Below are positions 5,343 through 18,249 of a DNA stretch of 64,000 nt, in pieces. A model generated the notes under the pieces. That model worked only from the letters and a program-made list of their open reading frames with translations, was not told the origin of the DNA and ran no database searches. The translations under genes and the position numbers were made by a program. Each line of letters opens with the position of its first letter. The stretch's first letter is position 1. The DNA is taken from the IMG/VR virus record IMGVR_UViG_3300046692_000091, positions 1 to 64,000 of that record; one strand, given 5' to 3'.

Positions 5343-5349
5343 AACGTGG

Positions 5350-5380
5350 ATTTAAACCTTTTGAAAGGCTATATTACTAA
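5350..5380 (+). promoter_or_regulatory. phiKZ-type early (virion RNAP) promoter
   Basis: TATATTAC at 5370-5377 with upstream ATTTAAA; TATATTAC is the established phiKZ early promoter core. Confidence 0.8.
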
Positions 5381-5412
5381 CCTGAATCTAAGCCCTCAAA
5401 AGGAACTGACTT

Positions 5413-5733
5413 ATGGATACAACGTCTAAAGTTGTGCTTGGTATTACAGGTAGTATTGCTTCAATATGCGTAGCTTCATTCGCACGTATTGCGCACCGCT
5501 CTAAAGAGGCCACCAAAGCTCTTGACCAAATGGGTGTAGAAATCAGGCTCATTCAGATTCAATTCAATGATGCCGATATTTCTCACATTCAAGCCGAGCG
5601 TGCTATCGATGTAGTTGTTGATAAATACAAGCACATCTACATGTGCTACACCTTGTCAGATAAAGCTTCAGCAAATGAGTTCTTTGAAATTCATCGCGCT
5701 GGTAGCAAGAAATTGTTGGGGTTCCCAGTATGA
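5413..5733 (+). CDS. Small N-terminally membrane-anchored protein
   Basis: 106 aa; hydrophobic N-terminus VVLGITGSIASICVASFA; AAGGA RBS. Confidence 0.75.
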   Translation: MDTTSKVVLGITGSIASICVASFARIAHRSKEATKALDQMGVEIRLIQIQFNDADISHIQAERAIDVVVDKYKHIYMCYTLSDKASANEFFEIHRAGSKKLLGFPV

Positions 5734-5897
5734 GTAATGTGATTGATGATTCCGTTAACGAGCGTTACCGTAGAATGGCTGAGGGTAAGGAACCCAAGGT
5801 TACATCGCAAGACATCCTGTGGATCACACCAAAACGACTGGGCGCACTATTCACAGTGTGTCTGGTTATGACCGTTATGCTCAATGGTGTTCACTGA
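5730..5897 (+). CDS. Membrane microprotein (55 aa, below ORF-track cutoff)
   Basis: ATGA overlap with upstream stop; C-terminal hydrophobic LGALFTVCLVMTVML. Confidence 0.6.
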   Translation: MSNVIDDSVNERYRRMAEGKEPKVTSQDILWITPKRLGALFTVCLVMTVMLNGVH

Positions 5898-5901
5898 GCT
5901 T

Positions 5902-5942
5902 GATTTAAAACGATTACAGGGCTATATTACTACAGTGATAAT
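5902..5942 (+). promoter_or_regulatory. Early promoter
   Basis: GATTTAAAA...GCTATATTACTACAGTGATAAT; core at 5923-5930. Confidence 0.85.
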
Positions 5943-5968
5943 AGCCCACTAATTTAAGGAAAAGCATC

Positions 5969-6088
5969 ATGAAAAATGCGCTGATGGCTTGGATGACAGT
6001 ATCTGTTGTAGGAGTATCGATGTTGATGCTTAATGAAATAGGTCGTCGTATGCAGACCATCGACGCACGTGCTGCTAAAGCCATTTAA
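5969..6088 (+). CDS. Membrane microprotein (39 aa)
   Basis: TAAGGA RBS right after promoter; MKNALMAWMTVSVVGVSMLML. Confidence 0.6.
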   Translation: MKNALMAWMTVSVVGVSMLMLNEIGRRMQTIDARAAKAI

Positions 6089-6113
6089 TTAAATCTCTCG
6101 ATGGAGCTCTACC

Positions 6114-6425
6114 ATGAATAAGCTCGCTCTTAGTTTGGTTACTGGTGTTCTCGTTACCTGTGGTCTGGCTGCTTGGAAAATCAATGACGTCAGCAAACAA
6201 CACACCGAAGCTTTGGAGTTGTTTACCAAAGAATTCGATGCACTGCACGCATTGGTAAAGTCCGGCATGCTGTCGGTAGAAGCAGGGTTGCAAGAGTACG
6301 AAATCCTGCACGCTCGTGGTGCAGAACGTTGCTTGGCCCATACCCTCGATCGTAGTGCTACTAAACAGTGGCTCGGCGATATCCACAAGGTCAATGTTGA
6401 ATTGATCAAGACCGCTAACGTTTAA
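6114..6425 (+). CDS. Small N-anchored membrane protein
   Basis: 103 aa, GGAG RBS, N-terminal TM followed by helical domain. Confidence 0.75.
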   Translation: MNKLALSLVTGVLVTCGLAAWKINDVSKQHTEALELFTKEFDALHALVKSGMLSVEAGLQEYEILHARGAERCLAHTLDRSATKQWLGDIHKVNVELIKTANV

Positions 6426-6431
6426 CCATTC

Positions 6432-6459
6432 CATGGCGACTTCGGTCGCCAGTTATGCC
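6432..6459 (+). terminator. Hairpin terminator (family member)
   Basis: TGGCGAC-TTCG-GTCGCCA followed by GTTATGCC. Confidence 0.65.
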
Positions 6460-6482
6460 ATCCCACATTAAGGAGTTTCATC

Positions 6483-6803
6483 ATGAGTAAATTTATCGTA
6501 GGCTTTACTGTGGGTGTCGTAGTTGGCGTCGCCGCATTCGGTGCATCGCTCTGGGTCCGTCATTATAAGACAGCTCAAGCTATCGATGATCTGGTTACCG
6601 GGTTTGAAGTAATCCGTAAAGACCACAAGGCTACAAATAACAATCTTACCTTGCGTGATGTTCTGATTCGTTATGAACTGTTACTCACCGAGATCAAGGC
6701 ACGTGTTCGTGTATCTGCAATTGATCCAGAAGAAATTGAAAAGCATCTGGACAATATTGCTGAATCCCATCGCTCTATCCTGAACACCATGTCCAAATAC
6801 TGA
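6483..6803 (+). CDS. Small N-anchored membrane protein
   Basis: 106 aa, TAAGGAG RBS, Gly-rich TM FIVGFTVGVVVGVAAFG. Confidence 0.75.
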   Translation: MSKFIVGFTVGVVVGVAAFGASLWVRHYKTAQAIDDLVTGFEVIRKDHKATNNNLTLRDVLIRYELLLTEIKARVRVSAIDPEEIEKHLDNIAESHRSILNTMSKY

Positions 6804-7069
6804 TGCATCCATTAAAGGAGCCAATCGTGGCTAATGCACAAGTGCAGCAAAAACCAAAACCAGAATACGCTATCTACGGTTGTGAGATCGTTCCAGCTAC
6901 TAAGCTGTGGCCTGATCGTGAACAATGCGTAGGTAAGTTCATTGCAATGGGTCGGACTCAAGAAGAAGTTGACCCTGAGTTGCAAGGTATCCGTACCTCT
7001 CTGCTGGTCAAAGTTGACCTGGAAGCAGGTTACGTCGAAACCCTGAATTCGATCTACCGCATCAAATAG
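6803..7069 (+). CDS. Hypothetical phage protein
   Basis: 88 aa; start may be GTG near 6827 after AAGGAG. Confidence 0.7.
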   Translation: MHPLKEPIVANAQVQQKPKPEYAIYGCEIVPATKLWPDREQCVGKFIAMGRTQEEVDPELQGIRTSLLVKVDLEAGYVETLNSIYRIK

Positions 7070-7071
7070 TC

Positions 7072-7112
7072 GATTTAAAAGATTTAAACAGCTATATTAC
7101 TACAGTGATAAT
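7072..7112 (+). promoter_or_regulatory. Early promoter
   Basis: GATTTAAAAGATTTAAACAGCTATATTACTACAGTGATAAT; core at 7093-7100. Confidence 0.85.
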
Positions 7113-7138
7113 CCCCCAGTAATCTTAGGAGTTGCATC

Positions 7139-7315
7139 ATGCTTAAGCTTATTCATATCGCTGGTTTGGCCGCTTTCACCGCAGCTAATACTGCCGTGAT
7201 CGTAGAAGAAGTTAAGAAGCCTGAGCCGTTGCGCAGCAATGCGAAACTGGCTGTTGGTCTCTCCTGTGTTGCTTTGGGCGTAACTTCGCTCATGCTCTCT
7301 TTCCGTAATACCTAA
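7139..7315 (+). CDS. Two-TM microprotein (58 aa)
   Basis: AGGAG RBS; two hydrophobic segments around the loop VEEVKKPEPLRSN. Confidence 0.65.
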   Translation: MLKLIHIAGLAAFTAANTAVIVEEVKKPEPLRSNAKLAVGLSCVALGVTSLMLSFRNT

Positions 7316-7331
7316 TCTAAGGAATACAATC

Positions 7332-7511
7332 ATGATCGGTTCCATCCTTCGCGTTACCCTGCTTGGCGTTGGTACTTATGTCTACGGTCGTAGTACTGTG
7401 GTTGAACTGAAAAAGCCGTCTGGCGACCGCAATAACCTTCAGCTTGTAGTAAGTGGCGCGATTGCTGGATTGTGTGCCTGTGCGATTGCTGAGATTGTAA
7501 CCTCGAAATAA
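7332..7511 (+). CDS. Two-TM microprotein (59 aa), likely paralog of 7139-7315
   Basis: TAAGGA RBS; loop VVELKKPSGDRNN resembles that of the neighbour. Confidence 0.65.
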   Translation: MIGSILRVTLLGVGTYVYGRSTVVELKKPSGDRNNLQLVVSGAIAGLCACAIAEIVTSK

Positions 7512-7532
7512 CCCCTGCCAGGTTTGCGGCAT

Positions 7533-7560
7533 GAGTTTATAGTCTTCGGATTATAAGCTC
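7533..7560 (+). terminator. Hairpin, probable terminator
   Basis: GAGTTTATAGTC-TTCG-GATTATAAGCTC. Confidence 0.6.
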
Positions 7561-7609
7561 ACTCTAATTTAAGTTATATCAATTTTCTTTTTACCAGAGG
7601 ATACACATC

Positions 7610-7780
7610 ATGCAATTTAAAGGCATCTTCTCCAACGATCCAGCTAAAGCAATGTCGCAGAAAGACATTGATCTGCAGTCTTCCCGACTGAAATTTGTGA
7701 GTGCCGCCGGTGGTGTAATCATCATGGCTTTGGGTATTGCTTTGGGCACTGTAAAACTCGCCAATGAATTGAAAAAGTAA
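7610..7780 (+). CDS. C-terminally anchored microprotein (56 aa)
   Basis: GAGGA RBS; hydrophobic AAGGVIIMALGIALG. Confidence 0.6.
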   Translation: MQFKGIFSNDPAKAMSQKDIDLQSSRLKFVSAAGGVIIMALGIALGTVKLANELKK

Positions 7781-7848
7781 TCAGCACAATCTAATGAGAG
7801 GGATCATGTCCGATCCCTCCATTAACCAATTTCATGGGGGCCGGTTCA

Positions 7849-8325
7849 ATGGCTGAATTTATTATCGGTAAAGATATCTTCAAGGAACCTGGAGATCTTT
7901 ACATTGTCACAGTGAATACAATCGGTGTAATGGGTGCAGGTGTTGCCAAAGCATTCGCAGAACGTCATCACGATTTGTTTCTTAAATATAAACACGATTG
8001 CAAGATGAAGTCTATTACTATCGGACATCCTGCACTATACGAAGGTACGGATGGCAAGCGCTATCTAATGTTCCCCACCAAAGAGAACTGGCGGAACCCC
8101 TCAACCTACGATTACGTTGGATTAGGTCTACAGTGGATCATTGATAATATCGGTGAAGACGATGATCAGATCAATCCTAAATGGACAATGATTATACCAC
8201 CTCTCGGATGTGGCAATGGTGGCCTAGACTTCGATATCGTCTCTGAGATGATCGAAGAAGCATCACAGAAGATTCCAAACAAGATGGTTGTTGTGTATCC
8301 ACCTTGGATGAGCGGTAAACAGTGA
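7849..8325 (+). CDS. Macrodomain protein (ADP-ribose binding/hydrolase, DarG-like)
   Basis: Macro motifs TVNTIGVMGAGVAKAF, FPTKENWRNPS, IPPLGCGNGGLD. Confidence 0.9.
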   Translation: MAEFIIGKDIFKEPGDLYIVTVNTIGVMGAGVAKAFAERHHDLFLKYKHDCKMKSITIGHPALYEGTDGKRYLMFPTKENWRNPSTYDYVGLGLQWIIDNIGEDDDQINPKWTMIIPPLGCGNGGLDFDIVSEMIEEASQKIPNKMVVVYPPWMSGKQ

Positions 8326-8330
8326 TACGC

Positions 8331-8364
8331 CATAAGCGCTACCCTACGGGGTAGCCTTTATGCC
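8331..8364 (+). terminator. CATAA-stem-TTATG terminator
   Basis: CATAA-GC-GCTACCC-TACG-GGGTAGC-CT-TTATGCC. Confidence 0.8.
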
Positions 8365-8374
8365 GTGACATTGA

Positions 8375-8410
8375 AACAGAATAAACACCTATATTACTAC
8401 CTTGATAATG
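8375..8410 (+). promoter_or_regulatory. Early promoter
   Basis: CTATATTACTACCTTGATAAT; core at 8390-8397. Confidence 0.85.
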
Positions 8411-8429
8411 CACCACTAATTTAAGGATA

Positions 8430-8720
8430 ATGATCATGACCGTTGTGAAGAATCTCCTTGGCATAATTGTAGTCTGTGCCACATTTGCAGCCACCACCTA
8501 CAACCAATCCCGCTTGGATCGTAATGATGCCATGCGTCGTATCCCAAAAGAAATCGAAAGTGCGCTCAAGCACTTCGTCTTCAAGCCGACCTTCGATGAA
8601 CTGAAAGGTCAGATGGAATTCTTTAGAATTTACACCGTAATGGGTATCTTCTTTCAGAAGCACAAAGATGAGTTCATTGCAGAACTCGACAAACAAATCA
8701 AAATGGCATCTAACGGTTAA
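8430..8720 (+). CDS. Small N-anchored membrane protein
   Basis: 96 aa; TAAGGA RBS; LLGIIVVCATFAA. Confidence 0.75.
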   Translation: MIMTVVKNLLGIIVVCATFAATTYNQSRLDRNDAMRRIPKEIESALKHFVFKPTFDELKGQMEFFRIYTVMGIFFQKHKDEFIAELDKQIKMASNG

Positions 8721-8733
8721 TTAAGGAAGTTTC

Positions 8734-8913
8734 ATGAAGAATGCAGTTGGCGCAGTTGTAGCGATCGCAACCATTGGTGGCCTGGGTTATTTGGCATACT
8801 GTCGCTACATGACCAAAGTACTTGATGCTGGTACAGATCAAGTTGTCAAAGGAATGGCAAACGTTAATGTCAAAAACAATCAAGTGATTCACTTGGGCCA
8901 CACTAAGGAGTAA
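8734..8913 (+). CDS. Membrane microprotein (59 aa)
   Basis: TAAGGA RBS; AVGAVVAIATIGGLGYLAY. Confidence 0.65.
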   Translation: MKNAVGAVVAIATIGGLGYLAYCRYMTKVLDAGTDQVVKGMANVNVKNNQVIHLGHTKE

Positions 8914-8917
8914 CACC

Positions 8918-9355
8918 ATGCAGAAAGATTCACTCGCTTTCCAAATCGCTTTCTACACTGGATTGACCAAACGCATCCAAGCTGCTGGTTTCGCTCTCGG
9001 GCAGGAAACGCCATTGGTTGGCAAAACGTACAAAGGCTATCTGATCAAACAGATCCGCTGTACGATGGAAGTGCACGAAGCGTCTTACGCCGCAACGTAC
9101 ACCGACAAAGAGGGCAAGGAAGGGCATTGTGTTGAAGTGCTTCGCTTCGAAAATGACCAGGTGAAGAAATTCATCGCCCAACGTTTCAACGTAATGCTCT
9201 TCACTCGTGAAGTTATCGATGTAGCCGTAATCGGTTATGACGGCATTGCAGTTGATGGTGATCCAATCAGCTTGGGTGCAACTTCTGGTGAAAGCCAGAT
9301 GAGCCCTGATGCTCGGTTGTTCTTCGATTCTCGACTGGTAGGGAACAAGGAATGA
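8918..9355 (+). CDS. Hypothetical protein
   Basis: 145 aa with strong TAAGGAG RBS. Confidence 0.75.
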   Translation: MQKDSLAFQIAFYTGLTKRIQAAGFALGQETPLVGKTYKGYLIKQIRCTMEVHEASYAATYTDKEGKEGHCVEVLRFENDQVKKFIAQRFNVMLFTREVIDVAVIGYDGIAVDGDPISLGATSGESQMSPDARLFFDSRLVGNKE

Positions 9356-9561
9356 TGGAAGTTAACAAATGGCCTACTGCATTCTTGCGTAAGTCGGTAC
9401 AGAAGAAACTTCAGGTTAAGGAACACAACCTGTCGTACGAGGCTAGGAAAGCCACATTCGTTGGTCATCCACGGGATACTGACATCGGCCCACGTGGCCA
9501 AACTGAACTTGAAGCATCCACCGCTTTTGCTGAAACGATCCTTCAGTACAAAAGCAAATAA
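9352..9561 (+). CDS. Hypothetical protein
   Basis: 69 aa, AAGGA RBS, followed by hairpin at 9568-9583. Confidence 0.65.
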   Translation: MMEVNKWPTAFLRKSVQKKLQVKEHNLSYEARKATFVGHPRDTDIGPRGQTELEASTAFAETILQYKSK

Positions 9562-9567
9562 ACTTGT

Positions 9568-9592
9568 GGGGACTTCGGTCCCCTATAGTTTC
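9568..9592 (+). terminator. Hairpin terminator
   Basis: GGGGAC-TTCG-GTCCCC then T-rich tail. Confidence 0.6.
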
Positions 9593-9652
9593 TCTATAAT
9601 GCATCGTATCGATTTATTATAAAGACACTATCCCACATTAAGAGTAAACATC

Positions 9653-9823
9653 ATGAAAAACCATATCTATTTCGTAATTGGTCTGACCATCGGTTCGATT
9701 GGTTTGGCTAACTTGTCTGCTCTGGCAGATGATCGTAAGGAAGTTGTAACTGTAGTTAAGAAGCAAACCATTCTCGGCCATCGCATTGGTCCTAATGGGC
9801 AAGAAATGCTGGTAGTTAAATAA
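9653..9823 (+). CDS. Membrane/secreted microprotein (56 aa)
   Basis: MKNHIYFVIGLTIGSIGLANLSALA, signal-peptide-like. Confidence 0.6.
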   Translation: MKNHIYFVIGLTIGSIGLANLSALADDRKEVVTVVKKQTILGHRIGPNGQEMLVVK

Positions 9824-9848
9824 CCCCACCTGCAAAGGAATACCGACT

Positions 9849-10052
9849 ATGAATCTGCTGACTCGCGTTGCTATCACTGCTACCGCTGGTATCGCTTCTG
9901 GCTTGGGTATCACCCTGCTGAAAGAAGGTATCAAACACGTCCACTCGGAAGACAAAGATGTACGCTTCGATGCCACCATCTTCGTGGGCGCTGGTGCGTT
10001 CTGCTTGGCTGCTGGTGTCACGGCTGTTCTCTCGACCGTCTTCGAGGAATGA
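9849..10052 (+). CDS. Two-TM Gly/Ala-rich microprotein
   Basis: 67 aa; AAGGA RBS. Confidence 0.7.
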   Translation: MNLLTRVAITATAGIASGLGITLLKEGIKHVHSEDKDVRFDATIFVGAGAFCLAAGVTAVLSTVFEE

Positions 10053-10333
10053 CAGGCTGGCAAACTGTGATGACACTGCTGCCCTACGTGGGCAGCATTT
10101 TATTGTCGTTCGGTGAAGCTTCAGTAAAAGCTTTCCAATCCCGTAACATTGCACATGGTCATGAGAAGCCGGCGTTCTACACATCGGTCCTGGTATCATC
10201 GACTAACGTTGCAAACATTACTTTCGTAGTCATGGGTGGTTGGTGGGTATTGTTACCTATAGCCATCGGTGGTTCATTCGGCACCGTATTCGCAATGCGC
10301 TTACACAAACATTTATTTAAGGAAAAGTCATGA
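10049..10333 (+). CDS. Small multi-pass membrane protein
   Basis: 94 aa with about three hydrophobic segments, ending GGSFGTVFAMRL. Confidence 0.7.
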   Translation: MTGWQTVMTLLPYVGSILLSFGEASVKAFQSRNIAHGHEKPAFYTSVLVSSTNVANITFVVMGGWWVLLPIAIGGSFGTVFAMRLHKHLFKEKS

Positions 10334-10722
10334 AACTCATTCAAAAAGCACTCGGTGCCCTGGTCAAGATCAAATCCTTCATCGTTATCCGTGACGACAA
10401 GCAACAACGTCTCGTTGATACTGAAGTCGATGCGATCATGGGTCACATCCGTGCGCTCTATCCACAGTTCATGACCGCTGGTAGTGATTTCAATATCATC
10501 CGTACTACAGGTGCGATCGAGTTGGACTTCAAACAAATGTCCTTCTACAAACAATCTTTCCGTGATCTTGGTATCGCCTTGAGCAATGCCACGCCTGAAA
10601 TGCAAGAAGCTGGTTTCAACATGTATCTGCGTTTCGGTAACAACATGATCCCAGTCAAAGTCTACAAACAAGTAGATATTGGTCGTGGTCATCTTTGCCG
10701 CATGATGAAGCCTGCGATTTAA
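10330..10722 (+). CDS. Hypothetical protein
   Basis: 130 aa, TAAGGA RBS, ATGA overlap with upstream stop. Confidence 0.75.
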   Translation: MKLIQKALGALVKIKSFIVIRDDKQQRLVDTEVDAIMGHIRALYPQFMTAGSDFNIIRTTGAIELDFKQMSFYKQSFRDLGIALSNATPEMQEAGFNMYLRFGNNMIPVKVYKQVDIGRGHLCRMMKPAI

Positions 10723-10756
10723 AACATTTAAACGACTATATTACTGTTGTGATAAC
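10716..10756 (+). promoter_or_regulatory. Early promoter
   Basis: GATTTAAAACATTTAAACGACTATATTACTGTTGTGATAA; core at 10737-10744. Confidence 0.85.
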
Positions 10757-10782
10757 AGTTATCAATTTAAGGAGTTTCACCT

Positions 10783-10974
10783 ATGTCCGTATTCGAAAAT
10801 CTTGTTGCTGGTGGTTCTGCTGGTGCTGCTACCGGAGTTGGTGTCCTCTTCCTGACCGAAGGTAACCGGTTCCGCAAGGAAGGCGATAAGAAGAGTGCGG
10901 CCATTCTTCTAACCGCCGGTGCCATTGTTGGTCTGACTGGTATCTGCCACTTCGTTAATCTGCTTCGTAAGTAA
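10783..10974 (+). CDS. Two-TM glycine-zipper-like microprotein
   Basis: 63 aa; TAAGGAG RBS; AGGSAGAATGVG. Confidence 0.7.
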   Translation: MSVFENLVAGGSAGAATGVGVLFLTEGNRFRKEGDKKSAAILLTAGAIVGLTGICHFVNLLRK

Positions 10975-11003
10975 TTAACCAATCTAAGTTTAGGAGTATC
11001 CCC

Positions 11004-11120
11004 ATGGGTTCTTTCGTCAAGATCGTTATCGTTGCAGTAACCTGCGGCGTAGTTCAACAACTCGTTACTTCGGTTTCCGAGGCGTACCGTCCATCTCCGA
11101 AGGTTGAAGAACCTAAGTAA
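11004..11120 (+). CDS. Membrane microprotein (38 aa)
   Basis: TAGGAG RBS; FVKIVIVAVTCGVV. Confidence 0.55.
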   Translation: MGSFVKIVIVAVTCGVVQQLVTSVSEAYRPSPKVEEPK

Positions 11121-11172
11121 GTTCTTCTGTAAGTCTCCCACCGAATTTCAAATTAAGCTAGGGGCAATAACC

Positions 11173-11307
11173 ATGGGCAAAGCATTTATGGAAATGGGCG
11201 TGATTGGCAAGGTGATCGTGGTTCTGATCATTGCCAGTACCACCAAAGAATGTGTTCGGCACATTGCTGAAACCATTCGCATGAACAAAGAAGCATCCCC
11301 GAAGTAA
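11173..11307 (+). CDS. Membrane microprotein (44 aa)
   Basis: AGGGG RBS; VIGKVIVVLIIA. Confidence 0.55.
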   Translation: MGKAFMEMGVIGKVIVVLIIASTTKECVRHIAETIRMNKEASPK

Positions 11308-11358
11308 TCGGCGATTCCGCCTGCTGTACGTTTACTACCCCACGTAAGGAGTAACACC

Positions 11359-11529
11359 ATGTTCAGTACTCTTCTGAAAGTTGCTGGTATCGCCGCTATC
11401 GGTTACATCGGTTTCCAAGTCGGTCGTCACTGGGATGAAATCTCTGCGGAGATGGAAACCCTGGACCCACCGACGCCAACTGAACCCACTGTGGTCGTTG
11501 ATTCACCAATGCCACCGGCTGGAGAATAA
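11359..11529 (+). CDS. Membrane microprotein (56 aa) with Pro-rich tail
   Basis: TAAGGAG RBS; LLKVAGIAAIGYIGF. Confidence 0.65.
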   Translation: MFSTLLKVAGIAAIGYIGFQVGRHWDEISAEMETLDPPTPTEPTVVVDSPMPPAGE

Positions 11530-11532
11530 GTC

Positions 11533-11817
11533 ATGTCATTACTCGGTTCACTGATCAAGATCGGCGCAGTCGCCACCCTCGTTGTATTAGGTCAACGACT
11601 CTGGGACCGCTATCAGGTTGAAGACCTGTATGTGGAACTGGATGCGATCGTTGATCGTGTCCGGGCTGACAAAGGTCGGCGAGGAACTGTGCGTGCACAT
11701 GTCCTGGTCGAAGCAAAAGAACTCATCGCGATGTATGAACGTAAAGTAAATTACGTTGATTCATTGAATGAGCTCCGCCGTAACGTTGAGATCTACATCG
11801 AGTCGATCCCTGACTGA
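11533..11817 (+). CDS. Small N-anchored membrane protein
   Basis: 94 aa, GGAG RBS. Confidence 0.7.
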   Translation: MSLLGSLIKIGAVATLVVLGQRLWDRYQVEDLYVELDAIVDRVRADKGRRGTVRAHVLVEAKELIAMYERKVNYVDSLNELRRNVEIYIESIPD

Positions 11818-11822
11818 TGTCC

Positions 11823-11863
11823 GGGGTGGGGGGCTTCGGTCCCCCATCTCAACTTTCTTTTTT
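11823..11863 (+). terminator. Intrinsic terminator
   Basis: GGGGTGGGGGGC-TTCG-GTCCCCCATCTC then T-run. Confidence 0.75.
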
Positions 11864-11895
11864 ATACCGTATTAATTTTATTTAGGGGTTAACAC

Positions 11896-12231
11896 ATGTC
11901 CAACATCAAACTAGAAATCGCTGGGAAGATTGCATTCGCTGTAATAGCTACAGTAGCATTTGTTGCTATCGCGCAAGCTGCTGCACCAATGCGTGAGATC
12001 AATACAATCATCGAAGAAGTAAAGCTCGATTGGGTTGATGCTAAAATGCGTCAGTCCATTAATGACAAATACAATGCTGGTAAGTTAACTCGGCTTGCCT
12101 GGTTGGAAGCTATGCATAACGGTCCAGCTGCAACGTTATGGTTGCGCCTGTCTACAACTTATCCAAATCATACACACTACATCGCAAAACGTATCCGTCA
12201 AGAATATCCACATGCAACCAAATGGGTTTAA
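11896..12231 (+). CDS. N-anchored or secreted small protein
   Basis: 111 aa, AGGGG RBS, IAFAVIATVAFVAIAQA. Confidence 0.7.
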   Translation: MSNIKLEIAGKIAFAVIATVAFVAIAQAAAPMREINTIIEEVKLDWVDAKMRQSINDKYNAGKLTRLAWLEAMHNGPAATLWLRLSTTYPNHTHYIAKRIRQEYPHATKWV

Positions 12232-12233
12232 TC

Positions 12234-12437
12234 ATGCGCAAGATAGCTCTATCCCTGGCAATGTGCTGCGCCTGTATCATTGGCGTGGCTCAAGCCATGT
12301 GGGAAATCGAACAACCGGTTGGTGGCGTTTCAGAACAGTTCTGTAAGCGCCCTGATCGTCCTTGCACAGCTTTTAGCTACGAGGTGACCTATGAGTCAGT
12401 CGCCGCAACTTCAATCCCTACAGAGATCGTCCAGTGA
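12234..12437 (+). CDS. Small secreted protein (signal peptide ending AQA)
   Basis: MRKIALSLAMCCACIIGVAQA. Confidence 0.55.
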   Translation: MRKIALSLAMCCACIIGVAQAMWEIEQPVGGVSEQFCKRPDRPCTAFSYEVTYESVAATSIPTEIVQ

Positions 12438-12739
12438 TCGTTAAAACGTTTCCAACTCATTCCCAGATCTGGCCTGCTGTACCGAAAGGTAAAGTGGACA
12501 AGCTCCGTAACTTGATCGTCAAGAACATGATGTTCCCTGATAACCAACCGGCCTGGCAAGTTTCAGGTCCTAAAGGTGAACAGGGTTTCAATGTTCGTAT
12601 TCCTGGTATCTACTCTGCTGAAGAAGTAGAAGTGTATCGTCAGGAAATGTCATCGGCTGACTGGGAACTCCGGAAAGTCAAACACCATGCTGGGAACACA
12701 ATTATCGTTCTCGTCAAAACAGGAAATGACCATGCTTGA
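12434..12739 (+). CDS. Hypothetical protein, distant member of the 'YW..G..EL..GW' family
   Basis: 101 aa; FNVRIPGIYSAEEVEVYRQEMSSADW. Confidence 0.6.
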   Translation: MIVKTFPTHSQIWPAVPKGKVDKLRNLIVKNMMFPDNQPAWQVSGPKGEQGFNVRIPGIYSAEEVEVYRQEMSSADWELRKVKHHAGNTIIVLVKTGNDHA

Positions 12740-13247
12740 GTTGTCGCCACTTGTTACACAACTGTTCCGTACCATCCCAACGAATGACACAATTGAGAAC
12801 TGGCGTGAGCTGGCTCATTTATTCGTTACCGCGATGAATACGGAACAACCCGATTGGTTGGACGATTGCCCAGTGCTACTCGCTGGTGACCCCAACGAAT
12901 GGGATTGGATGGCGTGGTTGATCGTTCTCAAGTGTCTTGTTGAGAAGGGTTTTAAGCTTCAGGTTGGTAACTGCAAGTCCTACTGGTTCCTAAAGAGCCA
13001 AACTTCCAAGTGGGCTACGATCGAAGGTGAACATAAGCTGATCGAGCTTTGTTTCGTGTCTCTATTCGGGGATACCTTCTCTGGCCATGCCACTGAGTAT
13101 TACCCTTCATCTGATGCACTGCAGGCTATTCGTGCATTGCGTCGTCGTATCGTGGATGACCTGACTACGAAAGATTCTGGTTTCGGTTGGTCGGTTGAAG
13201 AAGCCATTCGTCTTAATGGGAAGAGTCATGTTGCGATTCCTGCGTAA
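12726..13247 (+). CDS. Hypothetical protein
   Basis: Start reassigned to ATG after AGGA; about 173 aa. Confidence 0.7.
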   Translation: MTMLELSPLVTQLFRTIPTNDTIENWRELAHLFVTAMNTEQPDWLDDCPVLLAGDPNEWDWMAWLIVLKCLVEKGFKLQVGNCKSYWFLKSQTSKWATIEGEHKLIELCFVSLFGDTFSGHATEYYPSSDALQAIRALRRRIVDDLTTKDSGFGWSVEEAIRLNGKSHVAIPA

Positions 13248-13446
13248 ACTGTTGGGTCTGTGTAATCACGAATACCAGATGATCTCCCGTGAACGAGTTA
13301 AGTCTCGTCCGGGGGCTACATTTATTTCGATTGATCGTGCTGGTAAGTACGACACTCATGAATTGTTCGTGTTCCAATGTGCTCATTGCTGCACTGTTCG
13401 TACACGACGTGTTGATTTGGTTACGGGAAAAGTGAAATGCCGTTAG
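13228..13446 (+). CDS. Small putative Zn-ribbon protein
   Basis: CNHEY...QCAHC motif. Confidence 0.6.
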   Translation: MLRFLRKLLGLCNHEYQMISRERVKSRPGATFISIDRAGKYDTHELFVFQCAHCCTVRTRRVDLVTGKVKCR

Positions 13447-13643
13447 GTATGGCCGGTGGAGTTATCTTCGCCATGACTGTTATGTTGATCATCTCTATTC
13501 TGGCAGCAATCGTTGTCATCAATAAAGATAGCCACGATCGCAATGGTCAGTTGATGTGGACCTTCGGGACAATGGGTGTAGAGGTACTGGTTATTTTCGT
13601 AACCATGACTAACTACATCAATCACGGGATAGGTGCTGCATGA
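13437..13643 (+). CDS. Two-TM microprotein
   Basis: 68 aa, two hydrophobic helices. Confidence 0.65.
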   Translation: MPLGMAGGVIFAMTVMLIISILAAIVVINKDSHDRNGQLMWTFGTMGVEVLVIFVTMTNYINHGIGAA

Positions 13644-13906
13644 TGATCCCATGGATAACACTAGCGGTAGCCTTGGCAGCTCTTGTAGTTGCCGTTATCG
13701 CTCTTTACAGAGCAACTCATACCGAGCGTAAGGTTATGGTGATACCACCGCCTTGCTCTCACAAGTGGAGTGTGCGTGATTTCTCTAACCAGACTGATCG
13801 AAACTACCGCTGCACGGGGTATGTGTACATCATGCAGTGTGCCAACTGTGGTGATCTTAAAGACATGCATGTTAACGTTAACGGACGCAATCGGACGGAA
13901 CATTAA
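13640..13906 (+). CDS. Membrane-anchored putative Zn-ribbon protein
   Basis: N-terminal TM, then CSHKW...QCANC. Confidence 0.65.
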   Translation: MMIPWITLAVALAALVVAVIALYRATHTERKVMVIPPPCSHKWSVRDFSNQTDRNYRCTGYVYIMQCANCGDLKDMHVNVNGRNRTEH

Positions 13907-14403
13907 TGAAAGACGAAACTCTGTACCAAGCATTCCAGGCTTTGTTCTTCACCTGCTGGCAATCGAAAGATGCTAAAAAGAACTACACCGAAAAGCTTCG
14001 TGCTCTGTGTGAACTCGGTGAAGGGGTATGGCCTGAGCGTTTCGAGATGGTTCGAGGCAACCATGCCTGGCCCAACTGGCAACAGCGTTACAATGACCCT
14101 GAGGCTATTCTGCCTCAGCAGATCTGTGACGATGCATTGCTGCAACGTATTACGATCGAGATGTTGATGGACTGCTCGTTTCATGCTCGGAATGATTGGT
14201 ACATCAATATCGAAGGTAATCGTCGTGTTGATGATGGCTTGGGTGCAATCAAGTTGACCTACTATAACCGTGTCTCGGAAGAGACTCTGTATATCGGTCA
14301 GTTCTTCGGTTGCGGTATTACCAGCAATGCCATTATTGAAGTGGGTCGACACATCCGCTTCATTGAAGGTGCTTCTAATCCAATGACGGCCGATACTGAA
14401 TGA
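13906..14403 (+). CDS. Hypothetical protein
   Basis: 165 aa, TAATG overlap. Confidence 0.7.
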   Translation: MKDETLYQAFQALFFTCWQSKDAKKNYTEKLRALCELGEGVWPERFEMVRGNHAWPNWQQRYNDPEAILPQQICDDALLQRITIEMLMDCSFHARNDWYINIEGNRRVDDGLGAIKLTYYNRVSEETLYIGQFFGCGITSNAIIEVGRHIRFIEGASNPMTADTE

Positions 14404-14648
14404 TCCAGATAACTTCAATGGGTTTCTGGGCAGCATGTGCATTGATCAGTGTTGCCATTGCCTTCTTAGGTGGATGGCATCATTGGCACCTGGATGAACG
14501 CTTTCGTGAACTAAAGGTTCACAATGACAGTCAGGTTAAATACTTCAGTACAATCGTGCACTTGTTCGGTTGTATTGCATGGATAATCCTGGCTGCAATC
14601 TGTTGTGGAATGATGGTTTACATGGACATCAAAGCACGGGGATTGTAA
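14400..14648 (+). CDS. Two-TM small protein
   Basis: 82 aa. Confidence 0.65.
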   Translation: MIQITSMGFWAACALISVAIAFLGGWHHWHLDERFRELKVHNDSQVKYFSTIVHLFGCIAWIILAAICCGMMVYMDIKARGL

Positions 14649-14712: not shown

Positions 14713-14793
14713 TCGCTTTAATTGGGAGTAGAGTCTTTAGCTCTACTCTTCCTTTATTCTTTTTGCTCTACGATAACCCAACAGGGGATTACT

Positions 14794-15174: not shown

Positions 15175-15717
15175 ATGTTCAAGTCTGGCGATAGTTATAC
15201 CGTACCGGTTTTACAAATTGGCAATATCGATTTCCTGCGGGAAGGATGGTCAGAGGAGGCCGGAGTAGCAGGTGATCGTATTTGGTGTATTACCAATAAC
15301 CCTAAGTCTGGTATTATCCGTGTACAGGTTACGAAAGTAAAACGTTTCCCACTGCGTACTGTTCAAGAACTCCGTAAGATTTCTGAAATGGTTAACTGGG
15401 CTCTTACTGATGGGTACTACATGGACGTTCATCAAGTCCATGGTTACCTGCAGAACAAGTACATGTGCCTGATGTTGAAAGGCAGCCATTGTCATTCGTT
15501 CACCAGAACAGAAACAGATATGGGGGTTGATTACATCATGACTTATCTGAATGCATCCAGTAATGGCACATGCACATCAGTAGCCCAGCATGTGACTAAT
15601 CTAGCTGGCTGTGATCTTGACCCATGGCAAATGCGTGCATCTGCACGTACCTGGTATCAACGTCTGTTAGATGACATCGAATTCAAACTTAACCAACTAG
15701 AGAAGGAAGCAGCTTGA
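15175..15717 (+). CDS. Hypothetical protein
   Basis: 180 aa, AGGGA RBS. Confidence 0.7.
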   Translation: MFKSGDSYTVPVLQIGNIDFLREGWSEEAGVAGDRIWCITNNPKSGIIRVQVTKVKRFPLRTVQELRKISEMVNWALTDGYYMDVHQVHGYLQNKYMCLMLKGSHCHSFTRTETDMGVDYIMTYLNASSNGTCTSVAQHVTNLAGCDLDPWQMRASARTWYQRLLDDIEFKLNQLEKEAA

Positions 15718-16511
15718 TGTTGTCTAATATTGAACATGGCCTCCAACACTTCGGTTTCGGTAAAGCATACATCGCGTTAGCACCAGAAACAGTTCGTAGT
15801 GAATCTTACTACATTGCACTTAGTGATGGTAAGACTACCTGGTATCTTGGCCGGCATGAGAACTGGATAACCGTGTACAATGAATCCATGTTGCTAACCT
15901 GGAATCAAACAGAGCACTTCTGGCTCAACGAACAACGTCCTAGGTTACTGCAAGGCATAGCACTGCAGGTGGGTCACATTGCCAAGAAGTTCGATATGAA
16001 AACAGTTTGTCTTAATCTGGTTGAACTCGATACCAACGTTATTGTAGACTCGGTCTGGATCGAACAGTACATCACCAAACGTGCTCAGTTGGTACCTATC
16101 TCCATGGCGATGAACTTATCACCCGAACAAACCCGTGGTGTGTATGCCGTAGGACAACAGCAATGTCAGGTTTTCGATAACTACCACATAACAACTCCGG
16201 CTACGACAGAAGAAAGTGACTGGGCTATCCCGACAGTTGCAGAATTCCGTAAGCGTCAGAACATGGACACTGTTACTTATCAAGAAGTGATGAATGCTGT
16301 TGAAGCATTATTCGAAGATCCAAAGATGTGGGATCAGCGTTTGGTTAGCGATGATCGTTATTATTGGACCATCGGAGTCCATGGTCAGGTAAGCCAAGGA
16401 CTCATGAACAAAGTAAAACTGGAACTTACTACAAAAGGCTGGGATGTCCTCTGGGGTCACAATTCAAGACACTGGGATCTGTCTCTGTATGTAAATAAGG
16501 AAAACAAGTAA
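15714..16511 (+). CDS. Hypothetical protein with C-terminal 'YW..G..EL..GW' domain
   Basis: 265 aa; C-terminus YYWTIGVHG...KVKLELTTKGW. Confidence 0.7.
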   Translation: MMLSNIEHGLQHFGFGKAYIALAPETVRSESYYIALSDGKTTWYLGRHENWITVYNESMLLTWNQTEHFWLNEQRPRLLQGIALQVGHIAKKFDMKTVCLNLVELDTNVIVDSVWIEQYITKRAQLVPISMAMNLSPEQTRGVYAVGQQQCQVFDNYHITTPATTEESDWAIPTVAEFRKRQNMDTVTYQEVMNAVEALFEDPKMWDQRLVSDDRYYWTIGVHGQVSQGLMNKVKLELTTKGWDVLWGHNSRHWDLSLYVNKENK

Positions 16512-16807
16512 TGCACGTAACTAAGTTTATGTCTCGACACGTACCAACCATTCCCGAGGATCTCAACATTGTTGAATATCCATCTGCTGGAATGTTCCTG
16601 GTAGATTTGAAACGTCGTGCCCGTGCTGTGGCAGGACTCCGTGGTGTCACCAATGCAGATACCATGTCTCTCGATCTGAATGCTTTGCAACATGCTGAGC
16701 GTAAGATCGTTGATGGTTACAAAGGAAAGTTCTCGGTTGATGAACACATCATCGCTGAGTACGCAATTCACGTCGCAAACGAATCCTGCTATTGGAACTT
16801 CAAATAA
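16511..16807 (+). CDS. Hypothetical protein
   Basis: 98 aa, TAATG overlap. Confidence 0.7.
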   Translation: MHVTKFMSRHVPTIPEDLNIVEYPSAGMFLVDLKRRARAVAGLRGVTNADTMSLDLNALQHAERKIVDGYKGKFSVDEHIIAEYAIHVANESCYWNFK

Positions 16808-16856
16808 AACTACTCTGGAGCAAACATTATGTTTGTCTTTTAGAGTGGTGGTGAAA

Positions 16857-17393: not shown

Positions 17394-17814
17394 ACTGAAA
17401 GAAGCCCTCATTGGCGTTTGGTCTGATGATCGTGATCCAAACGCCCCACTGCGTCGTGAACGCGCTGACATGAATCGTCGCGTAGCGAATCTGGTGGAGC
17501 GGGCTATTGTAAGTGGCGCATACGCCGGCCCACGTTTAGCCGATGACGGTTTCATGTGTATCGTTCTGAGCAACACTGTCGATGATATTGAAGCGGCAAA
17601 GGTAGCAAGAGAACGGATCATGCACCGTATCTATCCGAAGGTATCTTTGGTGTCTTATCTGGTGGAACACGACGAGCTTGATCTTACAGACGACCAGTTT
17701 ACAATGCGTATCCATGCCTCGAATTGGTACTGGAAATTTGTTAATGAACAACGCGGTCATGCAGATCGCCTTGAACAAAATTGCTGCCCCTTCCAATTTA
17801 ATAAGGTTCTGTGA
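17383..17814 (+). CDS. Hypothetical protein (FMC...WYWxF family)
   Basis: 143 aa. Confidence 0.7.
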   Translation: MFRKLKEALIGVWSDDRDPNAPLRRERADMNRRVANLVERAIVSGAYAGPRLADDGFMCIVLSNTVDDIEAAKVARERIMHRIYPKVSLVSYLVEHDELDLTDDQFTMRIHASNWYWKFVNEQRGHADRLEQNCCPFQFNKVL

Positions 17815-18245: not shown

Positions 18246-18249
18246 TCCC

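What the first reader, a model, noticed from the sequence alone, without database searches (positions are those of the whole stretch)
5413..14648. Dense early-expressed array of about 23 membrane microproteins
Seen: ORFs of 38-111 aa with one to three hydrophobic helices start at 5413, 5730, 5969, 6114, 6483, 7139, 7332, 7610, 8430, 8734, 9653, 9849, 10049, 10783, 11004, 11173, 11359, 11533, 11896, 12234, 13437, 13640 and 14400. Most have a clear SD. Ten or so are below the ORF-track cutoff. Five TATATTAC promoters drive the region. Known: phiKZ-like phages transcribe early genes with virion RNAP, initially from a membrane-bound early infection vesicle. Inference: this is an immediate-early membrane-remodelling module (vesicle maintenance, superinfection exclusion, or decoys/inhibitors of membrane-based defences) that standard annotation would largely miss.
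Basis: partly seen in the sequence, partly recalled or inferred. Interest (0 to 1): 0.72.

Follow-up and report, generated by a model that had tools for sequence, protein, structure and literature searches.

The report
Early membrane-microprotein island in jumbo phage
A 9-kb stretch of a phiKZ-like giant phage really does encode about 23 tiny, fast-evolving membrane-anchored proteins, most of them behind early virion-polymerase promoters; they are candidates for the unknown phage proteins that sit on the early infection vesicle or inner membrane, but automated annotation already calls them and their function is untested.

Summary
All 23 ORFs exist, and all 22 that have an ortholog in the closest relative are under purifying selection (dN/dS 0-0.44). 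This 3% of the 314.8-kb genome holds 21 of its 49 small TM genes (p=1e-8). The five TATATTAC sites match the extended phiKZ/201phi2-1 early-promoter consensus.

Corrections to the finding:
- Only 14 of the 23 genes lie in units headed by those promoters. Nine lie behind hairpins with no early promoter.
- The "annotation would miss them" claim is refuted. JGI/IMG and Logan called even the 38-aa genes on this contig, and GenBank relatives annotate them.

The island is conserved by position around a macro-domain gene in Pseudomonas chimalliviruses (phiKZ gp102.1-gp108, PhiPA3 gp109-113). It is expanded here by local gene duplication and cassette replacement, and sequences turn over beyond recognition.

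The best functional precedent is phiKZ gp241. It has an N-terminal TM anchor and a helical tail, sits behind an early promoter, locates to the EPI vesicle and is sensed by JukA. It shares architecture with the array but has no detectable homology to it. One member (10049) matches a "holin" PHROG.

Function remains inferred: early, cytoplasm-facing membrane-anchored accessory factors in a host arms race.

The parts
5348..5385 (+). Early (virion RNAP) promoter P1; core TATATTAC at 5370-5377
   Evidence: Exact core plus extended consensus, PWM 37.7. 36 nt upstream of the ATG at 5413.
5413..5733 (+). 106 aa; N-terminal TM anchor plus helical tail (class A, gp241-like architecture)
   Evidence: Omega 0.08 vs L025. 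hhalign 91% to the 6114 family over the soluble part.
5730..5897 (+). 55 aa; C-terminal TM (tail-anchored)
   Evidence: Orthologs in 8 relatives. hhalign 82% to phiKZ gp102.1.
5901..5938 (+). Early promoter P2; core at 5923-5930
   Evidence: PWM 45.7; 39-nt leader.
5969..6088 (+). 39 aa; single TM
   Evidence: 100% aa identity with 3 synonymous changes vs L025. Called by JGI and Logan.
6114..6425 (+). 103 aa; N-terminal TM plus helical tail (class A)
   Evidence: Paralog of 6483 (hhalign 94.5%, full length).
6483..6803 (+). 106 aa; N-terminal TM plus helical tail (class A); absent from the closest relative
   Evidence: No ortholog in L025. Only a 28% match in Psa21.
7071..7108 (+). Early promoter P3; core at 7093-7100
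   Evidence: PWM 43.0; 39-nt leader.
7139..7315 (+). 58 aa; 2-TM hairpin
   Evidence: Adjacent paralog of 7332 (hhalign 97%). Omega 0.11.
7332..7511 (+). 59 aa; one strong TM and one weak hydrophobic segment
   Evidence: Omega 0.23.
7532..7561 (+). Intergenic CTTCGG-loop hairpin (terminator-like, AT-rich stem)
   Evidence: sequence shown.
7610..7780 (+). 56 aa; C-terminal-half TM; no early promoter upstream
   Evidence: Orthologs 55-96%.
7834..8325 (+). 163-aa macro-domain protein; conserved anchor of the island (phiKZ gp104 / PhiPA3 gp108)
   Evidence: Pfam Macro, 28.2 bits against a cutoff of 22. 58-95% identical across chimalliviruses.
8337..8362 (+). Hairpin followed by CTTTATG after the macro gene (phiKZ-type terminator look-alike)
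   Evidence: Read directly from the sequence. The same hairpin-CTTTAT arrangement precedes phiKZ gp241's promoter.
8368..8405 (+). Early promoter P4; core at 8390-8397
   Evidence: PWM 38.1.
8430..8720 (+). 96 aa (94 aa if the start is 8436); N-terminal TM plus helical tail (class A)
   Evidence: Omega 0.44. The 39-nt leader rule points to the ATG at 8436.
8734..8913 (+). 59 aa; N-terminal TM
   Evidence: Omega 0.29 vs L025.
9568..9583 (+). GC-rich CTTCGG hairpin (terminator-like)
9653..9823 (+). 56 aa; N-terminal TM or signal-like segment plus conserved C-terminal motif; the most widely conserved member
   Evidence: phrog_15989, E=1.3e-9. hhalign 97% to PhiPA3 gp111. No early promoter upstream.
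9849..10052 (+). 67 aa; 2-TM hairpin; paralog of 10783
   Evidence: Omega 0.05.
10049..10333 (+). 94 aa; 2 TM; matches the PHROG 'holin' family
   Evidence: phrog_7045, E=1.8e-13. Homologs occur in many chimalliviruses and in small Vibrio and Pseudoalteromonas phages. Genomic context is equivocal.
10715..10752 (+). Early promoter P5; core at 10737-10744
   Evidence: PWM 43.1.
10783..10974 (+). 63 aa; 2-TM hairpin; replaced allele relative to the closest relative
   Evidence: 46% aa identity to L025 amid neighbours at 95-99%; dS 1.27. Paralog of 9849.
11004..11120 (+). 38 aa; single TM
   Evidence: Adjacent paralog of 11173 (hhalign 96%).
11173..11307 (+). 44 aa; hydrophobic segment with an embedded Lys (weaker TM call)
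   Evidence: Omega 0.08.
11359..11529 (+). 56 aa; N-terminal hydrophobic segment plus Pro/Thr-rich tail
   Evidence: Paralog at G000 93521.
11533..11817 (+). 94 aa; N-terminal hydrophobic helix (invariant K9) plus helical hairpin; invariant C-terminal EIYIESIPD
   Evidence: Alignment A1. AF2 model pLDDT 84. Only 8 full-length representative clusters in 1.84 billion proteins.
11823..11850 (+). 12-bp GC-rich CTTCGG hairpin followed by a T-run (best terminator candidate)
11896..12231 (+). 111 aa; N-terminal TM plus tail (class A); no early promoter upstream
   Evidence: Omega 0.18.
12234..12437 (+). 67 aa; signal-peptide-like N-terminus (ends AQA)
   Evidence: Omega 0.27.
13437..13643 (+). 68 aa; 2 TM
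   Evidence: 74% aa identity to L025.
13640..13906 (+). 88 aa; N-terminal TM plus Cys-rich tail
   Evidence: phrog_18527, E=1.3e-6. 59% aa identity to L025, omega 0.44.
14400..14648 (+). 82 aa; 2 TM
   Evidence: Omega 0.15.
14724..14750 (+). Hairpin that closes the array

Best explanation
This is a positionally conserved, hypervariable accessory island of membrane-anchored microprotein genes in a phiKZ-like (Chimalliviridae) Pseudomonas jumbo phage from a rhizosphere metagenome.

Shown:
- The genes are real and under purifying selection.
- They are strongly enriched for conserved hydrophobic anchors.
- Five phiKZ-type early promoters head units that contain 14 of the 23 genes.
- The island sits between the gp097-101-like virion genes and the downstream early genes, around a macro-domain gene. 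That is the same place as phiKZ gp102.1-gp108 and PhiPA3 gp109-gp113.
- It grew partly by local gene duplication, and alleles are swapped by recombination.

Inferred mechanism:
- Within minutes of injection the virion RNA polymerase transcribes these units from inside the EPI vesicle.
- The exported mRNAs are translated nearby.
- The products are mostly predicted N-out/C-in single-pass anchors, tail anchors and 2-TM hairpins that translocate only a few residues. They would therefore insert without large-domain export into the closest inner-membrane-derived bilayer (the EPI vesicle and/or the inner membrane), leaving short helical tails facing the cytoplasm.
- There they would act as dispensable, host-specific interaction factors (vesicle-surface functions, counter-defence or exclusion). 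Host sensors of such proteins, as JukA is for phiKZ gp241, would drive their rapid turnover.

The nine genes without an early promoter, including the 'holin'-like 10049, may be expressed by read-through or at another time, and need not share the function.
For: - Real genes: best frame in 23 of 23. Omega 0-0.44 in 22 of 22 vs L025 and 0.05-0.42 for almost all members with an ortholog in L010.
- TM segments are conserved in orthologs at 30-50% identity, and most members are predicted N-out/C-in.
- Enrichment p=1.2e-8.
- Promoters: the extended consensus matches the published phiKZ/201phi2-1 motif (PMC7058600, PMC11512511). PWM gives 32-35 forward and 0 reverse hits, close to phiKZ's 32 early promoters (10.1101/2023.10.13.562163). 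Leaders of 36-39 nt fit phiKZ's 31-40-nt 5'UTRs (PMC8244752).
- Synteny of the array across Psa21, D6, RVTF4, the UViG loci, L025 and L026; smaller versions in PhiPA3 and phiKZ.
- Duplication: hhalign 91-97% for five gene pairs. Three to four promoter-leader segments are near-identical.
- Cassette replacement at 10783, 13437 and 13640; indel of 6483.
- Precedent: phiKZ gp241 is 109 aa with an N-terminal TM and a helical tail, behind a hairpin and TATATTAC. It is reported as an EPI-vesicle early protein sensed by JukA, and as non-essential (PMC13434031, PMC13282480, 10.1101/2025.11.23.690004).
- Genome-wide, 8 of 26 genes that come first after an early promoter are TM microproteins, against 41 of 408 others (p=0.005).
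Against: - There is no expression, localisation or phenotype data for this phage. No RNA run was listed.
- Nine of the 23 genes have no early promoter.
- Terminators are only pattern matches.
- TM and topology calls come from hydrophobicity and charge rules, not dedicated predictors. 11173 and 11533 are marginal.
- gp241 shows no sequence or profile homology to any member, so the analogy is architectural only.
- Outside the array, the link between early promoters and TM microproteins is not significant (3/21 vs 25/382, p=0.17).
- 10049 hits a 'holin' family, which points to a late lysis role for at least one member.
- Whether the products go to the vesicle or to the inner membrane cannot be distinguished.
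Confidence: 0.5

Rival explanations
1. Classical superinfection-exclusion or host-takeover proteins of the inner membrane. Like T4 Imm and Sp or T5 Llp, they would be made early and inserted in the cell's inner membrane or periplasm to block secondary phage DNA entry or receptors, with no role at the EPI vesicle.
For: Small size, early promoters and TM anchors. Two members have signal-peptide-like N-termini that could export the tail (9653, 12234). Fast evolution and cassette swapping fit phage-phage competition. The T4 Imm and Sp architectures are cited from my own knowledge.
Against: No Pfam or PHROG hit to any exclusion family. Most members are predicted C-in, leaving almost nothing exposed to the periplasm. 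Literature on chimalliviruses attributes isolation between co-infecting phages to separate vesicles and nuclei (PMC12908238).
Confidence: 0.2
2. A lysis-control module: holins, antiholins or pinholin-like proteins and their regulators. This would apply at least to the promoter-less block 9653-10722, and the membrane microproteins would act late.
For: 10049 matches phrog_7045 'holin' at E=1.8e-13 and has 2 TM. Relatives' annotations copy this label. Its block lacks an early promoter. In Pseudoalteromonas phage RIO-1 the homologous segment lies about 270 nt downstream of a putative endolysin.
Against: No endolysin or spanin lies next to it in the window. In Vibrio phage R31B the homolog sits among queuosine genes, and in RIO-1 it is the C-terminal part of a 199-aa protein. 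Fourteen other members are behind early promoters, which is the wrong timing for lysis. The label is an unverified family name.
Confidence: 0.12
3. Membrane tethers for virion morphogenesis: small anchors that organise procapsid assembly on the inner membrane, encoded next to the head and virion genes.
For: The island directly follows the virion-gene block on the same strand. Chimallivirus capsids assemble on the inner membrane (PMC12908238).
Against: Early promoters, not late ones, head the units. Turnover is extreme compared with structural genes (omega 0.01-0.04 and 88-99% identity for the neighbours). Gene content differs between close relatives, unlike morphogenesis genes.
Confidence: 0.05
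4. Chance ORFs or non-coding leader or spacer DNA between real genes.
For: Very short lengths (38-59 aa for ten of them). No family hits for 20 of the 23.
Against: Best frame in 23 of 23. Omega well below 1 in 22 of 22. Syntenic orthologs with conserved TM segments. Strong SD in 13 of 23. Tight packing with no alternative genes on either strand.
Confidence: 0.02

Closest known systems
phiKZ gp241 (PHIKZ241), activator of the Juk (JukA/JukB) anti-jumbo-phage defence
   Same: About 100 aa with an N-terminal TM helix and a helical cytoplasmic tail. It sits directly behind a terminator hairpin and a TATATTAC early promoter. It is lineage-restricted and fast-evolving and non-essential (10.1101/2025.11.23.690004). 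Six array members (5413, 6114, 6483, 8430, 11533, 11896) share the architecture. The 11533 model (H3-45, H53-69, H75-90) has the same three-helix layout as the low-confidence gp241-family model.
   Different: No detectable sequence or profile homology (phmmer E>0.8; hhalign 12% or less). It lies at a different genomic locus. EPI-vesicle location and JukA binding are known only for gp241.
phiKZ gp102.1-gp108 and PhiPA3 gp109-gp113 (uncharacterised small genes flanking the macro gene gp104/gp108)
   Same: Same genomic position, same strand, early promoters, and N- or C-terminally anchored small proteins. 5730 matches gp102.1 (hhalign 82%) and 9653 matches PhiPA3 gp111 (97%). PhiPA3 gp109 is a weak structural match to the 11533 model (TM-score 0.61).
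   Different: Far fewer members (about 3-6 in phiKZ, about 9 in PhiPA3, against 23 here). All other members are unrecognisable by sequence.
T4 Imm and Sp; T5 Llp (early small membrane proteins for superinfection exclusion)
   Same: Early-expressed phage membrane proteins under 100 aa with 1-2 TM segments or a signal anchor. This is functional logic recalled from my own knowledge.
   Different: No family match in Pfam or PHROGs. Those are single genes, not a 23-gene island. Most members here are predicted cytoplasm-facing.
Phage holins (PHROG phrog_7045)
   Same: 10049 matches the profile (E=1.8e-13) and has 2 TM.
   Different: Only one of the 23 matches. No adjacent endolysin. The family's genomic context elsewhere is inconsistent with a lysis cassette.
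Chlamydial inclusion-membrane (Inc) proteins
   Same: Conceptual only: a large, fast-evolving set of pathogen-made proteins with paired hydrophobic segments that decorate the cytosolic face of the pathogen's own vacuole (PMC4324299 abstract).
   Different: Unrelated organisms, delivery route and size. No homology is claimed or tested.

Membership tests
phiKZ-type early (virion RNAP) promoter | Core TATATTAC | tested here: met
   Five exact sites in the array. 30 forward and 2 reverse in the genome, against 1 and 6 for the control. The core is as published (PMC7058600).
phiKZ-type early (virion RNAP) promoter | Conserved AT-rich upstream elements around -20/-30 and a GTG downstream, as in the 201phi2-1/phiKZ logos | tested here: met
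   The consensus gATTTAAA..TTTaaA...C-TATATTAC-Ta..GTGaat comes from 30 sites. Array sites score 37.7-45.7 on the PWM.
phiKZ-type early (virion RNAP) promoter | Intergenic position with a 5'UTR of about 30-40 nt | tested here: met
   27 of 30 sites are intergenic. The array sites are 36-39 nt from the core to the ATG (PMC8244752).
phiKZ-type early (virion RNAP) promoter | Transcription start observed early in infection and independent of host RNAP | not testable with these tools
   No RNA run was listed for this phage.
gp241 / Juk-activator family | Sequence homology to PHIKZ241 | tested here: not met
   phmmer and blastp give E>0.1 against the whole proteome. hhalign gives 12% or less for all 23 families.
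gp241 / Juk-activator family | N-terminal TM plus a helical tail of about 85 aa, encoded behind an early promoter | tested here: met
   5413, 6114, 6483 and 8430 lie in early units. 11533 is a marginal TM call, and 11896 has no early promoter.
gp241 / Juk-activator family | Localises to the EPI vesicle and binds JukA | not testable with these tools
   Needs microscopy or pull-downs. The gp241-family model was too poor (pLDDT 56) for structural comparison.
Holin (phrog_7045), for 10049 only | Profile match and at least one TM domain | tested here: met
   E=1.8e-13 over 72 residues; 2 TM.
Holin (phrog_7045), for 10049 only | Lysis-cassette context (adjacent endolysin or spanin) | tested here: not met
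   The neighbours 9849 and 10330 have no lysis-family hits. Context in other phages is mixed.
Holin (phrog_7045), for 10049 only | Late expression and membrane permeabilisation | not testable with these tools
   The only result is negative: no early promoter upstream.
T4 Imm / Sp-type superinfection exclusion proteins | Family-level sequence match | tested here: not met
   No Pfam or PHROG match of that kind for any of the 23.
Macro domain (7834-8325, anchor gene) | Pfam PF01661 above the gathering score | tested here: met
   28.2 bits against a cutoff of 22. Orthologs are annotated as macro-domain proteins.

The most novel reading that the evidence does not exclude
The island encodes the phage-made membrane components of the EPI vesicle that reviews list as unidentified. 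Early microproteins would insert into the vesicle bilayer and build or regulate its exchange functions (mRNA export, nucleotide import) or the docking and hand-off site to the nascent ChmA nucleus. This would make it a viral organelle-membrane proteome that evolves under pressure from vesicle-targeting defences (Juk, Dionysus, Avs5).
Probability: 0.12. Interest if true: 0.9.

Novelty: new variant of a known kind. Interest (0 to 1): 0.55.

Why it matters
Recent reviews name two open questions (PMC12908238, PMC13282480). First, which proteins populate the EPI vesicle membrane, and how are molecules exchanged across it? Second, what do the many small uncharacterised jumbo-phage genes do?

This analysis turns a block of 'hypothetical proteins' into a defined candidate set:
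- a positionally conserved island behind virion-RNAP promoters;
- products that are almost all membrane-anchored and predicted to face the cytoplasm;
- evolution by duplication and cassette swapping.

The only characterised protein with the same architecture, gp241, is the trigger of a widespread anti-jumbo-phage defence. If other members are likewise sensed by, or counteract, vesicle-targeting defences, the island would help explain host range in phages that are candidates for biocontrol of Pseudomonas syringae. If the genes turn out to be ordinary exclusion or lysis genes, the result is still a clean annotation of 23 real microprotein genes.

Tried and rejected
- RNA evidence: the region is held only by DNA metagenome runs (rhizosphere, root, sediment). 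No RNA run was listed for the P10737 operon.
- Pfam: nothing passes its cutoff for any of the 23.
- PHROGs: only 9653, 10049 and 13640 hit.
- ESM Atlas features for 11533: best score 0.78, within the range that shuffled proteins reach, so no lead.
- gp241 homology was rejected by phmmer, blastp and hhalign. A shared 'IYIE[S/P]' motif is not significant.
Two gp241-family proteins returned by the homology search gave pLDDT 56, too poor for a fold search.
- BFVD search with the 11533 model: only its Psa21 ortholog is significant. The other chimallivirus ORFan matches (TM-score 0.6-0.8, E of 0.03 or more) are suggestive only, because small helical folds match easily.
- Sigma-70-like promoters are not enriched (18 found against 22.4 expected), so host-RNAP transcription was rejected as an explanation.
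- Degenerate early promoters upstream of 7610, 9653 and 11896 were looked for and not found.
- A first hhalign run inflated the 9849/10783 score because the two families shared members. It was redone with non-overlapping families.
- dN/dS against L010 and more distant relatives had saturated dS and was replaced by the L025 comparison.
- Literature searches found no paper describing TM-microprotein arrays in chimalliviruses. The library is incomplete; for example, I could not find the published Juk paper in it.

Full report
**What the window is.**
The window is the first 64 kb of a 314,814-bp IMG/VR jumbo-phage record recovered from a rhizosphere metagenome. I used a 163-aa macro-domain protein inside the flagged region (7834-8325) as an anchor. 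Its nearest named relatives are Pseudomonas phages D6 (87%), Psa21 (84%) and RVTF4 (78%), then PhiPA3 gp108 (67%) and the phiKZ group (58%). The phage is therefore a nucleus-forming phiKZ-like virus (Chimalliviridae). The region lies immediately downstream of the conserved virion-gene block equivalent to phiKZ gp097-gp101.

**Checking the observation.**
- All 23 ORFs are present at the stated coordinates with ATG starts.
- 22 of them have a 19-residue Kyte-Doolittle window of 1.6 or more. 11359 is just under that but has an uncharged hydrophobic run. 11173 and 11533 have a lysine inside the hydrophobic stretch and are weaker TM calls.
- A codon log-odds model trained on the genome's 140 long ORFs ranks the annotated frame first of the six frames for all 23.
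- 13 have a strong SD core, 8 a weak one and 2 none.
- A rough genome-wide gene call gave 434 genes, of which 49 are small (115 aa or less) with a TM segment. 21 of these lie in this 3% of the genome. 21 of 26 small genes in the region are TM, against 28 of 132 elsewhere (Fisher p=1.2e-8).

**Are they real genes?**
Yes. Most have syntenic orthologs in Psa21, D6, RVTF4 and five uncultured relatives. A very close relative (L025, a 314,538-bp contig) is syntenic gene for gene. Against it, dS is unsaturated and all 22 genes with an ortholog have dN/dS of 0.00-0.44, including the two with weak codon scores; the flanking structural genes have 0.01-0.04. The hydrophobic segments persist in orthologs that are only 30-50% identical. 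The reading that these are chance ORFs is rejected.

**Promoters and units.**
TATATTAC is the published core of the phiKZ early promoter (PMC7058600). It occurs 30 times forward and 2 reverse in this genome, against 1 and 6 for a reversed control.
- Aligning the sites recovers the extended consensus gATTTAAA..TTTaaA...C-TATATTAC-Ta..GTGaat, which matches the 201phi2-1 and phiKZ logos (PMC11512511).
- A PWM built from the 27 intergenic sites finds 32-35 forward and no reverse hits. That is close to the 32 early promoters reported for phiKZ (10.1101/2023.10.13.562163).
- The five sites in the region score 37.7-45.7. Each is followed 36-39 nt later by the start of a TM microprotein gene, and three to four of them share a near-identical leader.
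- Four intergenic CTTCGG-loop hairpins (7532, 9568, 11823, 14724), plus one after the macro gene, look like terminators.
- Together these define early units containing 14 of the 23 genes: 5413 and 5730; 5969, 6114 and 6483; 7139 and 7332; 8430 and 8734; and 10783 through 11533.
- The remaining nine (7610; 9653, 9849, 10049; 11896 through 14400) follow hairpins and have no early-promoter match, even a degenerate one. Whether they are read through or transcribed later is open.
- Sigma-70-like sites are not enriched.

**The annotation claim.**
This claim is refuted. The exact sequences of the ten smallest ORFs (38-59 aa) are already in the JGI/IMG and Logan gene calls for this same contig. JGI calls the whole array in L025 and L026. 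GenBank records of Psa21, D6 and RVTF4 annotate genes of 114-123 nt here. Only the older PhiPA3 annotation leaves several small TM ORFs uncalled.

**Anatomy and evolution.**
By architecture the members fall into four groups:
- Six proteins of about 94-111 aa with an N-terminal anchor and a helical tail (5413, 6114, 6483, 8430, 11533, 11896).
- Seven proteins with two hydrophobic segments (7139, 7332, 9849, 10049, 10783, 13437, 14400).
- Eight short single-pass or signal-like proteins (5969, 8734, 9653, 11004, 11173, 11359, 12234, 13640).
- Two anchored in the C-terminal half (5730, 7610).

Charge flanks predict N-out/C-in for most. Only a few residues would need to cross the membrane, and the tails would face the cytoplasm.

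Profile-profile comparison with non-overlapping ortholog families shows local duplication: 7139/7332 (97%), 9849/10783 (96%), 11004/11173 (96%), 6114/6483 (94.5%, full length) and 5413/6114 (91%).

Turnover is high. Identity to Psa21 is about 50% for array genes against 84-90% for the anchor and structural genes. 6483 is missing from the closest relative. 10783, 13640 and 13437 are 46-74% identical to L025 amid neighbours at 94-100%, with much higher dS, which indicates cassette replacement.

The array keeps its position in more distant relatives. I counted 15-19 small TM genes in each Psa21-like phage, about 9 in PhiPA3 and 3-6 in phiKZ/PA7. Only two sequence links reach the model phages: 9653 to PhiPA3 gp111, and 5730 to phiKZ gp102.1.

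**Function: what the databases say.**
- No Pfam family passes its cutoff for any of the 23.
- PHROGs matches only 9653 and 13640 (unknown function) and 10049 ('holin', E=1.8e-13).
- The 10049 family is widespread in chimalliviruses and in small marine phages. Its context is inconsistent with a lysis cassette: one case lies near an endolysin but is fused into a larger protein, and another lies among queuosine genes. I treat the holin label as unverified.
- The 11533 family is confined to this clade, with 8 full-length representative clusters in 1.84 billion proteins.
- Its AF2 model (pLDDT 84) is one long N-terminal helix plus a helical hairpin. Apart from the Psa21 ortholog, its best BFVD matches are other 87-118-aa chimallivirus ORFans, including PhiPA3 gp109. 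TM-scores are 0.6-0.8 but E-values are weak.

**Function: the precedent.**
Reviews state that JukA senses an early phiKZ protein located in or anchored to the EPI vesicle, gp241 (PMC13282480, PMC13434031). Phage Tn-seq lists gp241 as non-essential (10.1101/2025.11.23.690004).

I fetched gp241. It is 109 aa, with an N-terminal TM helix and a helical tail, directly behind a terminator hairpin and a TATATTAC promoter. That is the same architecture and expression signal as the array's roughly 100-aa class. It is not homologous to any array member by phmmer, blastp or hhalign, and its own family is restricted to the phiKZ genus. The gp241-family model was too poor for structural comparison. The link is therefore 'works like', not 'is a member of'.

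**Best explanation and its limits.**
- Shown: a real, positionally conserved, hypervariable island of membrane-anchored microprotein genes, mostly behind virion-RNAP promoters.
- Inferred: early synthesis; insertion into the EPI vesicle and/or the inner membrane with cytoplasm-facing tails; and accessory host-interaction roles whose rapid turnover reflects conflict with vesicle-targeting defences or competing phages.
- Genome-wide, TM microproteins are over-represented as the first gene after an early promoter (8/26 vs 41/408, p=0.005). Outside the array this is not significant.
- Rivals: inner-membrane exclusion proteins of the T4 Imm/Sp type; a lysis module for the 9653-10722 block; morphogenesis tethers.
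- None of these can be separated without expression and localisation data, and none was available.

**Novelty.**
Small early genes of unknown function in jumbo phages are well known, and these particular genes are already annotated as hypothetical in relatives. I did not find the following described in the searchable literature:
- the strong TM enrichment;
- the conserved position around the macro gene;
- the growth of the island by duplication and cassette swapping;
- the architectural match to the Juk trigger.

I rate this a new variant of a known kind, of moderate interest, mainly because it supplies a concrete candidate list for the unidentified phage proteins of the EPI vesicle membrane.

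Noticed in passing
L025:12280-12984 (between the orthologs of window 9653 and 9849): The closest relative carries a 234-aa GIY-YIG homing-endonuclease gene inserted in the array. It is absent from the window, which is a possible driver of local recombination.
   Followed up: partly
window 6483-6803: This 106-aa class A gene, a distant paralog of 6114, is missing from the otherwise gene-for-gene syntenic relative L025. It has only a 28% match in Psa21.
   Followed up: partly
G000 92559-93694, 124762-125100 and 280674-281843 (outside the window): There are three further places where an early promoter (93046, 124716, 280892) is followed by TM microproteins. One is a run of five 67-79-aa TM proteins, mostly with two TM segments. 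Another is a 112-aa gp241-like N-anchored protein. 93521 is a paralog of window 11359.
   Followed up: partly
whole genome G000: All 32-35 early-promoter PWM hits are on the + strand and none on the - strand. Many are preceded by a hairpin followed by CTTTATG, as upstream of phiKZ gp241.
   Followed up: partly
window 15717-20278: Just downstream of the array is a separate paralog family of soluble proteins: 18250, 19988, the C-terminal part of 18646, and weakly 15717. 17383/17814 and 19598/22397 are also paralog pairs.
   Followed up: no
window 13195-13446 and 13640-13906: By eye, the soluble 83-aa protein and the TM-anchored 88-aa protein share a Cys/His pattern (C-x-H ... Q-C-A-x-C) that looks like a zinc ribbon. 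A blastp comparison printed no alignment.
   Followed up: partly
window 11533-11817 vs phiKZ gp241 (L021:21900-22229): Both families contain an invariant 'IYIE[S/P]' motif. It is at the C-terminus in the 11533 family and internal in gp241. hhalign probability is only 11%.
   Followed up: partly
L016/L018 (PhiPA3 95-114 kb) and phiKZ-group records: PhiPA3's annotation leaves gaps beside gp108 in which my gene caller finds small TM ORFs of 34-60 aa. The 10049 'holin-like' homolog is unannotated in many phiKZ-group GenBank records.
   Followed up: no
window 8430 vs 8436: The constant 39-nt promoter-to-ATG spacing and the SD position favour the ATG at 8436 (94 aa) over 8430 (96 aa, as called by JGI).
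   Followed up: partly
P0038 (ortholog of window 11359 in the 314,538-bp contig): A source names this 56-aa protein 'threonine/homoserine/homoserine lactone efflux protein'. That is probably a spurious label caused by its hydrophobic composition.
   Followed up: no
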